Positions 42,809 to 43,123 of a stretch of 64,000 nucleotides of DNA are shown one piece after another. This DNA comes from Octopus bimaculoides. Its lineage: Eukaryota. Position 1 is the first letter of the stretch; every line of letters starts with the position of its first letter. The stretch covers positions 159,297,031 through 159,361,030 of the forward strand of contig NC_068982.1 in the NCBI RefSeq assembly GCF_001194135.2, given 5' to 3'. The translations under genes were made by a program, and so were the position numbers. A model generated the notes under the pieces. That model searched no databases. It worked only from the letters and a program-made list of their open reading frames with translations, and was not told where the DNA came from.

Positions 42809-43123
42809 TCACAGCGGTGGGGGATCCATTCTTTGTGGGACCACTGCATCAAAGAGACTTCTGTTTTTTGTTTCGTTTTCTCTATCCGTATCAGCCATGC
42901 CAGAGTAGTTTTCCATAGTGACATCAAGAGCGTCAGTATGTGTTCTAATAAGGGCATAGGATCGGATGAATTCATTTTTCTTCCGCTCTATCTGCTCAAC
43001 GGTTCTACAGAAGCCATTGTTCTTCAGTGCAGCAGTGATGGTGTTGTTTGGCGGATCGCTGCTAGCACTCGTCCATGCTCGAAGCAGAAGATTTAATTCT
43101 TTACTCTCTTACTTTGGTGCCAT
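42809..43123 (-). pseudogene. Myb/SANT-like trihelix DNA-binding domain frame (Harbinger ORF2/MSANTD-like) with one internal TAA at codon 5
   Basis: MAPK*ESKELNLLLRAWTSASSDPPNNTITAALKNNGFCRTVEQIERKKNEFIRSYALIR...SLFDAVVPQRMDPPPL* fits W-x3-E-x3-L-[IL]-x2-W ... L-x3-GF-x-RT-x2-Q-x3-K-x6-Y. Confidence 0.78.

What the first reader, a model, noticed from the sequence alone, without database searches (positions are those of the whole stretch)
42809..43123. Hidden Myb/SANT trihelix ORF whose only internal lesion is TAA at the invariant Trp
Seen: ATG (AAAGATGG context) at 43123 downstream of a pyrimidine tract of about 100 nt. The single internal stop, at codon 5, falls where the trihelix pattern needs W, and 99 open codons follow. 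The 3' stop coincides with the LINE junction, so the frame may be truncated. The ORF track missed it. Known: PIF/Harbinger elements encode such proteins and they are often domesticated; coleoids recode extensively by A-to-I editing, and double editing of UAA reads as UGG. Inference: most likely a recently dead TE gene (TGG to TAA), but an editing-restored stop or a consensus error is testable and would be notable.
Basis: partly seen in the sequence, partly recalled or inferred. Interest (0 to 1): 0.72.

Follow-up and report, generated by a model that had tools for sequence, protein, structure and literature searches.

The report
Dead 5' fragment of an octopus LINE
The "hidden Myb gene" is a decayed, cut-off front end of the first gene (ORF1) of an octopus LINE retrotransposon. 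It is an ordinary transposon fossil, although the LINE family it comes from has an unusual ORF1 protein design.

Summary
The sequence features are real. On the minus strand there is an ATG at 43123, a TAA at codon 5 (43111-43109), 99 open codons, a TGA at 42811-42809 and a 100-nt pyrimidine tract upstream.

Homologs show that codon 5 was ancestrally Trp: 14 of 18 relatives have W, and one paralog has TGG.

The ORF is not a PIF/Harbinger gene. In paralogous Octopus vulgaris loci the same ORF, with the same CT-rich leader, lies directly upstream of an endonuclease and reverse-transcriptase ORF2. It is therefore ORF1 of a dispersed LINE family. Full-length ORF1 proteins are about 260-370 aa and carry three parts:
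- an N-terminal three-helix Myb/SANT-like domain (weak to borderline Myb_DNA-bind_4 matches);
- a CCCH zinc finger;
- a conserved C-terminal motif.

TAA is not the only lesion in the window copy:
- A 1-nt deletion at 42834/42833 shifts the frame, so the TGA is frameshift-induced.
- Homology ends at 42801, exactly at a GT splice donor used by two annotated O. vulgaris gene models.
- The rest of ORF1 and all of ORF2 are missing.
- Private substitutions look neutral (about 13 nonsynonymous to 3-4 synonymous).

Editing UAA to UGG could only restore a truncated, frameshifted fragment. Verdict: an ordinary TE fossil of low interest. The ORF1 architecture of the family deserves a note.

The parts
42801..43236 (-). 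Whole remnant: the 5' end (part of the 5' UTR plus the first ~108 codons of ORF1) of a LINE family found dispersed in Octopus vulgaris and O. sinensis
   Evidence: By blastn it is 83% identical to L002 9886-10325 and 75% identical to L001 9992-10324. Three-way alignment A3.
43141..43240 (-). CT-rich (pyrimidine) tract, a shortened version of the family's CT-rich 5' UTR
   Evidence: Pyrimidine content is 83-90%. It aligns to the CT-rich leaders of L001 and L002. The same feature lies upstream of ORF1 in L005 at 6407-6964 and within the P0109 N-terminus.
43121..43123 (-). ORF1 start codon (aaagATGg)
   Evidence: It aligns with the ATG of P0001 and P0002.
43109..43111 (-). TAA nonsense codon replacing the ancestral TGG (the conserved first Trp of the domain). 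It arose by a tandem GG>AA change.
   Evidence: Alignment A3 shows window TAA, L001 TGG and L002 CGG. W is present in 14 of 18 relatives. The changes at 43110 and 43109 are private to the window.
42836..43123 (-). Codons 1-96, still in the family frame. They encode the remnant of the N-terminal three-helix Myb/SANT-like domain of ORF1p.
   Evidence: The translation is 73% identical to P0001 and 68% identical to P0002. Pfam Myb_DNA-bind_4 gives E=0.068 with X at the stop and 6.5e-4 with W. The AF2 model of paralog P0002 has helices at 7-19, 25-35 and 42-74 with pLDDT 92-97.
42833..42834 (-). Site of a 1-nt deletion (frameshift) relative to both paralogs
   Evidence: Alignment A3, column ~459. 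The shifted frame 42833-42801 reads KNGSPTAVNKQ, matching P0002 QKNGSHTPVNDQ.
42809..42811 (-). It is a frameshift-induced stop, not the natural ORF1 stop.
   Evidence: Full-length family ORF1 continues for 150-260 more codons.
42800..42801 (-). Breakpoint where homology to the LINE family ends. It coincides to the base with an AG|GTAGTG splice-donor site of the family.
   Evidence: The window reads ...AACAAGCAG|CTTTAG. L007 reads ...GACGAG|GTAGTG, L008 ...GACCAG|GTAGTG and L001 ...ACCAA|GTAGTG. Gene models P0105 and P0122 end their first exon there.
41050..42800 (.). Flanking sequence of unknown origin, not part of the LINE family. The + strand looks more coding-like than the - strand.
   Evidence: There is no Pfam hit, no protein homolog, no PDB hit, and no similarity to any fetched locus.

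Best explanation
Window 43236-42801 (minus strand) is a non-functional relic of the 5' end of a non-LTR (LINE) retrotransposon. It holds part of the CT-rich 5' UTR and the first ~108 codons of ORF1.

In intact relatives, ORF1 encodes a protein of about 260-370 aa. It has an N-terminal three-helix Myb/SANT-like domain with the motif W-x3-E-x3-L..AW...QIERKKxEFxRSYxLIRPH, a basic linker, a CCCH zinc finger, and a conserved C-terminal motif. ORF1 is followed by an ORF2 with an apurinic-type endonuclease and a reverse transcriptase. By analogy with other LINE ORF1 proteins, this protein presumably binds nucleic acid in the retrotransposition particle (inferred, not shown).

The window copy carries several lesions:
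- TGG>TAA at the conserved Trp (codon 5);
- a 1-nt deletion at codon 97, which creates the TGA;
- a neutral-looking load of amino-acid replacements;
- loss of everything downstream of 42801.

How the truncation arose is inferred, not shown. The break lies exactly at a GT splice donor that annotated O. vulgaris gene models use to join this LINE exon to unrelated downstream exons. The fragment may therefore be a retrocopy of a spliced, LINE-initiated chimeric transcript (about 45%). The alternative is an ordinary deletion or rearrangement (about 55%).
For: - Homologs: the only close protein homologs are Octopus hypothetical proteins. A profile search finds 31 relatives. The named ones are all O. 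vulgaris or O. sinensis and lie on sequences of at least 8 different lengths, that is, different chromosomes.
- Order in L001: CT-rich leader, ORF1, CCCH finger in the same frame, EN, then RT on one strand. EN is confirmed by Pfam (Exo_endo_phos_2, E=6.5e-13).
- Order in L005: the same order, with Exo_endo_phos_2 at E=1.1e-13 and RVT_1 at E=8.3e-31.
- L002 shows ORF1 followed by the start of EN. In L004 the C-terminal part of ORF1 overlaps the ORF2 start by 49 nt.
- No EN or RT of this family is present anywhere in the window.
- The DNA alignment shows TAA versus TGG/CGG, the 1-nt deletion, and the end of homology at 42801. The alternative frame reads KNGSPTAVNKQ.
- There are 19 private substitutions in 289 coding nt, about 13 nonsynonymous to 3-4 synonymous, including replacements at conserved positions such as the RPH motif.
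- Splice donor: in L007 and L008 the genomic sequence continues past the site, and the gene models splice there.
Against: - The window fragment itself has no ORF2, 3' tail or target-site duplication. Its LINE origin therefore rests on paralogs.
- The LINE clade was not determined.
- "Private" substitutions were inferred from only two DNA paralogs, so some may be subfamily differences.
- For the spliced-retrocopy sub-claim, no poly(A) or tail and no TSD were found. The downstream sequence could not be identified as an exon, and its + strand looks more coding-like than the - strand. The nearest paralog, L002, has GC rather than GT at the donor.
Confidence: 0.9

Rival explanations
1. One reading: a remnant of the Myb-like accessory gene of a PIF/Harbinger DNA transposon, or a domesticated derivative of one.
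Against: - In four paralogous or related loci the ORF is followed on the same strand by EN/RT, not by a DDE transposase.
- There are no terminal inverted repeats around the window copy.
- The + frames of 41001-44000 have no transposase domain.
- Full-length proteins carry a CCCH finger and a C-terminal motif that continues into LINE ORF2.
Confidence: 0.02
2. Editing-restored gene: the locus is transcribed, and ADAR edits both adenosines of UAA to inosine so that the codon reads UGG. This would yield a functional small Myb-like protein.
For: - The A>G direction would restore the ancestral Trp.
- Restorative editing of G-to-A substitutions is discussed for coleoids (PMC6881472).
- Editing of premature stops in pseudogenes is documented in fungi (PMC10776026).
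Against: - The remnant also has a frameshift. It lacks the CCCH finger, the C-terminal motif and ORF2.
- Its private changes look neutral and hit conserved residues.
- The local RNA fold is not more stable than shuffled sequence (z=-0.89), and no long inverted repeat is nearby.
- No exact product of this locus is on record in the protein collection.
Confidence: 0.01
3. Assembly or consensus error: the true genomic codon is TGG (or TAG/TGA) and the ORF is less broken than it looks.
For: The window comes from an assembly with gaps (N runs at 5730, 24558, 34616, 46769 and 62226). Reads could not be inspected.
Against: - Two adjacent substitutions would both have to be errors, in sequence that is neither homopolymeric nor low-complexity.
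- Even with TGG, the copy stays frameshifted and truncated and lacks ORF2, so the conclusion would not change.
Confidence: 0.03
4. On the truncation only: the 3' loss is a plain genomic deletion or rearrangement, and its coincidence with the splice donor is chance.
For: - No tail or TSD was found.
- The flanking 41050-42800 is not recognisable as an exon or as part of the LINE.
- The + strand of the flank looks more coding-like.
Against: The breakpoint matches the AG|GT donor to the base. That donor is used by two independent gene models on different chromosomes. A random break in about 440 nt would land within 1 nt of it less than 1% of the time.
Confidence: 0.5

Closest known systems
LINE ORF1 proteins, types I-V (Khazina and Weichenrieder 2009; Metcalfe and Casane 2014, PMC4120745)
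   Same: The family's ORF1 holds the same position as in other LINEs. It lies immediately upstream of, and slightly overlaps, an EN-RT ORF2. It is basic and carries a zinc finger, so a nucleic-acid-binding role in the retrotransposition particle is the natural inference.
   Different: The described types are built from RRM, CCHC knuckle, coiled coil, PHD and esterase modules. Neither Myb/SANT nor CCCH appears in that classification. This family would fall under 'type V, unclassified'. The window holds only a broken third of such an ORF1.
Pfam Myb_DNA-bind_4 (PF13837), trihelix GT-1-type Myb/SANT-like domains, including the Myb-like proteins of PIF/Harbinger elements
   Same: The fold is a three-helix bundle. 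The pattern W-x3-E-x3-L...G-x-R-[ST]-x2-Q-x3-K-x2-[LF]-x3-Y matches. One family member scores 29.3 bits against a cut-off of 27. GT-1 (2jmw), the PHR1 MYB domain, the DMAP1 SANT domain and Zeste are among the best compact structural neighbours.
   Different: The second and third conserved Trp positions hold I and K. Most members, including the window ORF (14-20.5 bits), score below the cut-off. No Foldseek match is significant. The genomic partner is EN/RT, not a DDE transposase.
Myb-like DNA-binding motifs inside other LINE proteins (the R2 N-terminus; TRAS/SART) - from my own knowledge; R2 papers are listed
   Same: These are precedents for LINEs that carry a Myb-type helix bundle together with zinc fingers.
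   Different: In those elements the Myb motif sits in the RT-containing protein and serves target-site recognition. Here it is the N-terminus of a separate ORF1. No target specificity is evident, because the copies are dispersed.
SpIREs and LINE-initiated chimeric transcripts of human L1 - from my own knowledge
   Same: The element is truncated exactly at an internal GT donor, as expected if a spliced LINE-initiated RNA was reverse-transcribed.
   Different: The downstream part is not recognisable as LINE sequence. No tail or TSD was found, so this remains a hypothesis.
RTE-2_OV, the brain-expressed LINE of Octopus vulgaris (PMC9115989)
   Same: It is a LINE in an octopus genome.
   Different: RTE-2_OV has a single 1109-aa ORF with a C2H2 finger and no ORF1. 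The present family has two ORFs and a Myb-like/CCCH ORF1.

Membership tests
LINE (non-LTR retrotransposon) ORF1 | The ORF lies directly 5' of, and on the same strand as, an ORF2 that encodes an endonuclease and a reverse transcriptase. | tested here: met
   Met in paralogs L001, L002, L005 and L004. Pfam gives Exo_endo_phos_2 at E=1e-13 and RVT_1 at E=8e-31. It is not met in the window copy itself, which lacks ORF2.
LINE (non-LTR retrotransposon) ORF1 | Multi-copy and dispersed, with copies in different states of decay. | tested here: met
   There are 31 relatives. Named members lie on at least 8 O. vulgaris chromosomes plus O. sinensis. Copies differ by stops, frameshifts and internal deletions.
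LINE (non-LTR retrotransposon) ORF1 | The insertion carries a 3' tail and target-site duplications. | tested here: not met
   The window fragment has no 3' end of the element, and no direct repeat longer than 10 nt links its flanks. This is expected for a 5'-only relic.
Myb/SANT-like domain (Pfam Myb_DNA-bind_4, PF13837) | Profile score at or above the curated cut-off of 27 bits. | tested here: not met
   The window ORF scores 14 bits (E=0.068) with X at the stop and 20.5 bits (E=6.5e-4) with W. At the family level, 6 of 25 members match at E<=1, and only P0131 passes, at 29.3 bits.
Myb/SANT-like domain (Pfam Myb_DNA-bind_4, PF13837) | Three-helix bundle of the homeodomain-like/SANT type. | tested here: inconclusive
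   The AF2 model of paralog P0002 with a 25-sequence alignment has helices at 7-19, 25-35 and 42-74 with pLDDT 92-97. The best compact Foldseek neighbours are a homeodomain, the GT-1 trihelix, MYB, SANT and Zeste, but all have E>=1.
Myb/SANT-like domain (Pfam Myb_DNA-bind_4, PF13837) | Three regularly spaced conserved Trp or aromatic core residues. | tested here: inconclusive
   The first Trp is conserved in 14 of 18 relatives. It is the residue hit by TAA in the window. The positions equivalent to the second and third Trp hold I and K, while F52 and Y56 are conserved.
Myb/SANT-like domain (Pfam Myb_DNA-bind_4, PF13837) | Sequence-specific DNA binding. | not testable with these tools
   This needs biochemistry on an intact family member.
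PIF/Harbinger transposon (Myb-like accessory gene) | Paired with a DDE (DDE_Tnp_4-type) transposase gene between terminal inverted repeats with 3-bp TSDs. | tested here: not met
   The neighbours in paralogs are EN/RT. There is no Pfam domain in the + frames of 41001-44000. Only short inverted repeats at chance level occur within 41500-44700.
ADAR-recoded (editing-restored) stop codon | The edited adenosines lie in a stable double-stranded RNA structure. | tested here: not met
   The 301-nt fold around the TAA has z=-0.89 against shuffles. The local pairing to the CU tract is short, and no long inverted repeat is present.
ADAR-recoded (editing-restored) stop codon | A>G mismatches between RNA and DNA at both adenosines. 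| not testable with these tools
   No read data are available. Exact look-ups of window products found nothing.
Spliced retrocopy (SpIRE-like or chimeric) | The breakpoint lies at a canonical splice donor of the parent element. | tested here: met
   Homology ends at ...CAG|, where paralogs have |GTAGTG and where gene models P0105 and P0122 splice.
Spliced retrocopy (SpIRE-like or chimeric) | The downstream sequence matches an exon that follows an AG acceptor elsewhere, and the insertion ends in a tail with TSDs. | tested here: inconclusive
   The downstream 41050-42800 matches nothing available, and no TSD was found. Octopus genomes cannot be searched by DNA with these tools.

The most novel reading that the evidence does not exclude
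The fragment belongs to a cephalopod LINE family whose ORF1 protein has a domain architecture that I could not find described. It consists of an N-terminal Myb/SANT-like three-helix domain, a single CCCH zinc finger, and a conserved C-terminal SYADAV...EQxSFLxMAQRIVxQLxWL motif. This would be a further ORF1 type beyond the RRM/CCHC, coiled-coil/RRM, PHD and esterase types. The family also carries an internal splice donor that feeds LINE-initiated chimeric transcripts, one of which may have been retrocopied to give this locus. A much less likely residual reading, at about 1%, is functional UAA-to-UGG editing of this copy.
Probability: 0.4. Interest if true: 0.4.

Novelty: new member of a known kind. 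Interest (0 to 1): 0.18.

Why it matters
For the finding itself it matters little. It is one more decayed LINE fragment in a repeat-rich octopus genome. The stop at the Trp codon needs no special explanation such as RNA editing.

Two by-products may help annotators. First, an apparently undescribed ORF1 design (Myb/SANT-like domain plus CCCH finger) explains a set of "hypothetical proteins" in the Octopus vulgaris and O. sinensis annotations. Second, a splice donor inside this ORF1 produces chimeric gene models, which could mislead gene counts and searches for "domesticated Myb genes".

Tried and rejected
1. Nature of the flank. By eye, the + strand of 41950-42830 looked to me like an L1-type ORF1 (Transposase_22). 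Nothing supported this:
   - Pfam on the three + frames gave nothing.
   - A stitched 216-aa query found no homolog among 5.8 billion proteins and nothing in the PDB.
   - The region matches none of the fetched loci.
2. Mislabelled blastn. In my first blastn the database held both loci, so the locus labels were wrong. One search corrected this.
3. APOBEC-like hypermutation as the cause of GG>AA. There is no G>A excess: 5 of 44 private changes.
4. First AF2 model. With only 3 sequences it was poor (pLDDT 57) and its Foldseek matches were meaningless. I repeated it with 25 sequences.
5. PDB profile search. A search with the family profile against PDB sequences gave only chance hits, to ribosomal protein S8.
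6. Source species, reads and transcripts. Exact-sequence look-ups of 11 window ORFs found nothing.
7. TSDs and RNA genes. The TSD search found nothing convincing. No tRNA or Rfam family is present in the window.
8. Literature. I found no description of a Myb/CCCH ORF1. This is only weak evidence of absence.

Full report
**Observation.** On the minus strand the frame 43123->42809 reads MAPK*ESKELNLLLRAWTSASSDPPNNTITAALKNNGFCRTVEQIERKKNEFIRSYALIRTHTDALDVTMENYSGMADTDRENETKNRSLFDAVVPQRMDPPPL*.
- The ATG sits in the context aaagATGg.
- The only internal stop is TAA at 43111-43109.
- The closing TGA is at 42811-42809.
- A 100-nt tract of 83-90% pyrimidines lies at 43240-43141.
- A mechanical ORF list misses the frame, because only 35 codons follow the first start codon after the TAA.
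- Open length alone is not evidence, since this AT-rich window holds 40 stop-free runs of at least 99 codons. Homology is what makes the ORF real.

**Homologs and the Trp.** A search of 5.8 billion proteins returned two hits, both Octopus vulgaris hypothetical proteins.
- P0001 (91 aa, starting MSPKRESKEL) is 73% identical.
- P0002 (177 aa, starting MAPKWEKKEL) is 68% identical.

A profile of the three sequences found 31 relatives among 1.84 billion representatives. Those that carry names are from O. vulgaris or O. sinensis, and they lie on chromosome-scale records of at least eight different lengths. In a 25-sequence alignment, the column of window codon 5 is W in 14 of the 18 sequences that cover it; the others have R, R, S and V. 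At the DNA level the codon is TAA in the window, TGG in L001 and CGG in L002.

**What the ORF is.** The DNA around the paralogs shows that this is ORF1 of a LINE.
- In L001 (O. vulgaris OX597820.1) one strand carries, in order:
  - a CT-rich leader;
  - the ORF (10001-10534);
  - a CCCH zinc finger (CKFYLRGKCWHGEDGKNCRFAH), in the same frame just past a premature stop;
  - an endonuclease;
  - a reverse transcriptase with the motifs NYRPISLTS...YADDTK.
- L005 (OX597814.1) has the same order over about 3.9 kb: a CT-rich leader at 6407-6964, ORF1 at 7001-7789, EN at 7836-9103 and RT at 9083-10681. Pfam gives Exo_endo_phos_2 at E=1.1e-13 and RVT_1 at E=8.3e-31.
- L002 has ORF1 followed by the start of EN, and is then cut by another LINE.
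- In L004 the C-terminal part of ORF1 overlaps the ORF2 start by 49 nt.
- L006 is an internally deleted derivative, with ORF1 joined to the ORF2 C-terminus.

Full-length ORF1 proteins (P0115 371 aa, P0135 289 aa, P0128 262 aa, P0121 265 aa) share four parts:
- the N-terminal domain;
- a basic low-complexity linker;
- the CCCH finger;
- a C-terminal motif, SYADAV..AA.EQ.SFL.MAQRIV.QL.WL.

No DDE transposase or terminal inverted repeats are associated with the ORF. The PIF/Harbinger attribution is therefore rejected.

**Is the N-terminal domain Myb/SANT-like?** The evidence is moderate.
- Sequence: the window ORF alone scores below threshold against Myb_DNA-bind_4. It reaches 14 bits (E=0.068) with X at the stop and 20.5 bits (E=6.5e-4) with W, against a cut-off of 27. 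Across the family, Myb_DNA-bind_4 is the most frequent Pfam match, in 6 of 25 members. One member, P0131, passes the cut-off at 29.3 bits, E=1.2e-6.
- Structure: with a 25-sequence alignment, AlphaFold2 gives a confident three-helix bundle, with helices at 7-19, 25-35 and 42-74 and pLDDT 92-97. Foldseek against the PDB finds no significant match. The compact top neighbours are a homeodomain (4uus), the Arabidopsis GT-1 trihelix domain (2jmw, rmsd 2.9 over 65 columns), the PHR1 MYB domain, Zeste and the DMAP1 SANT domain.
- Conserved Trp positions: only the first of the three canonical Trp positions is conserved; the other two hold I and K.

I call the domain a divergent Myb/SANT-like (trihelix-type) domain. 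It works like one structurally, but formal membership is borderline.

**State of the window copy.** TAA is not the only lesion.
- Relative to both paralogs, one base is missing at 42834/42833. The last eight codons (RMDPPPL*) are therefore out of the family frame, and the TGA is a product of the frameshift. In the family frame, 42833-42801 reads KNGSPTAVNKQ, which matches P0002 QKNGSHTPVNDQ.
- Homology to all paralogs stops at 42801. About two thirds of ORF1, including the zinc finger, is missing, and so is all of ORF2. No EN or RT of this family occurs anywhere in the 64-kb window.
- There are 19 window-private substitutions in the 289 in-frame coding nucleotides (6.6%). They split about 13 nonsynonymous to 3-4 synonymous and hit conserved positions, for example RPH>RTH. 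This is the neutral expectation.
- Identity to the nearest available paralog is 83%. The copy is therefore old rather than recently dead.
- There is no G>A excess that would point to deaminase hypermutation.

**The break at 42801.** Two O. vulgaris gene models, P0105 and P0122, lose similarity to the family at exactly the residue where the window does. Their loci show that the genomic LINE sequence continues there (L007 ...GACGAG|GTAGTGAAGG; L008 ...GACCAG|GTAGTGAAGG). The models splice from this AG|GT donor to unrelated exons 1.7-5.4 kb downstream. The window reads ...AACAAGCAG|CTTTAGCG, so the break coincides with that donor to the base.

This suggests that the fragment is a retrocopy of a spliced, LINE-initiated chimeric RNA, analogous to human L1 SpIREs or chimeric retrocopies (my own knowledge). 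Several things argue for caution:
- No tail or TSD was found.
- The downstream 1.75 kb matches nothing I could reach.
- Its + strand looks more coding-like than its - strand.

I rate a spliced-retrocopy origin and a simple deletion about equally likely.

**Editing and consensus error.** Editing both adenosines of UAA would recreate the ancestral UGG. Restorative editing is a live topic (coleoids: PMC6881472; fungal pseudogene stops: PMC10776026). Here, however, it could only restore a truncated, frameshifted remnant with many private replacements.
- The RNA around the stop folds no better than shuffled sequence (z=-0.89), and no long inverted repeat is nearby.
- Reads and transcripts are not available through these tools, and exact-sequence look-ups found nothing.
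- A consensus error would need two adjacent wrong bases and would not change the verdict.

**Comparison with known systems and novelty.** The object is an ordinary LINE relic. The family behind it is less ordinary.
- The published ORF1 classification uses RRM/CCHC, coiled-coil/RRM/CTD, PHD and esterase types plus an "unclassified" bin. It mentions neither Myb/SANT nor CCHH-unrelated CCCH modules (PMC4120745).
- The known brain-expressed octopus LINE, RTE-2_OV, has a single ORF (PMC9115989).

Whether this ORF1 type is already recorded in Repbase or Dfam could not be checked. I therefore score the finding low (0.18) and flag the ORF1 architecture and the internal splice donor as the parts worth a specialist's glance.

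Noticed in passing
L001 9476-14600; L005 6407-10780; proteins P0115, P0135, P0128, P0121: This LINE family has an ORF1 made of a Myb/SANT-like three-helix domain, a basic linker, one CCCH zinc finger (C-x7-C-x8-C-x3-H) and a conserved C-terminal motif. A CT-rich 5' UTR of 100-500 nt always precedes it. I did not find this design in the ORF1 classifications I could read.
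   Followed up: partly
L007 4001-4333 (then 9779-9820 and 10258-10314); L008 4001-4162 (then 5840-6160): Two O. vulgaris gene models use the LINE ORF1 start as their first exon. They splice from an internal AG|GTAGTG donor to unrelated downstream exons. These are LINE-initiated chimeric models annotated as hypothetical proteins.
   Followed up: partly
L006 7001-7882: An internally deleted derivative of the same LINE. A full ORF1 (P0110) is joined almost directly to the last ~44 codons of ORF2. It may be a non-autonomous copy.
   Followed up: no
L005 10961-13866: A second, 5'-truncated copy of the same LINE (EN to the C-terminus, up to 98% identical to L001 at the C-terminus) lies in tandem right after the first copy. 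An assembly gap separates them.
   Followed up: no
window 45322-45698: An abundant short repeat, 88-92% identical to several copies in L002 (17738-18116 and 14266-14441) and 79% identical to one in L001. No tRNA or Rfam match, so its type is unknown (SINE-like?).
   Followed up: partly
window 39341-39428 and 40945-41033, with + strand coding remnants at about 39430-39900 and 40100-40950: Several decayed 3'-terminal fragments of another retroelement lie on the + strand. They carry C-terminal motifs such as ...WYEHVPSKVV...RRPDIVILN..., and (AAT)n microsatellites adjoin them. They are unrelated to the ORF1 family studied here (no tblastn hit). The recognition is by eye and memory only.
   Followed up: no
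window 5730-5746, 24558-24792, 34616-34703, 46769-46927, 62226-62550: Five runs of N (assembly gaps). Those checked (24558, 46769, 62226) are flanked by microsatellites or low-complexity sequence. None is near the finding.
   Followed up: no
window 42759-42773 and 42911-42925: A 15-nt inverted repeat (13 of 15 complementary) straddles the 42801 breakpoint. It is probably chance, but it could mark a rearrangement.
   Followed up: no
window 43100-43200 (minus strand RNA): In the minimum-energy fold, the purine-rich start of ORF1 (AAAGUAAGAGAGUAAAGAA) pairs with the CU-rich leader. The fold is not significant against shuffles (z=-0.89).
   Followed up: yes
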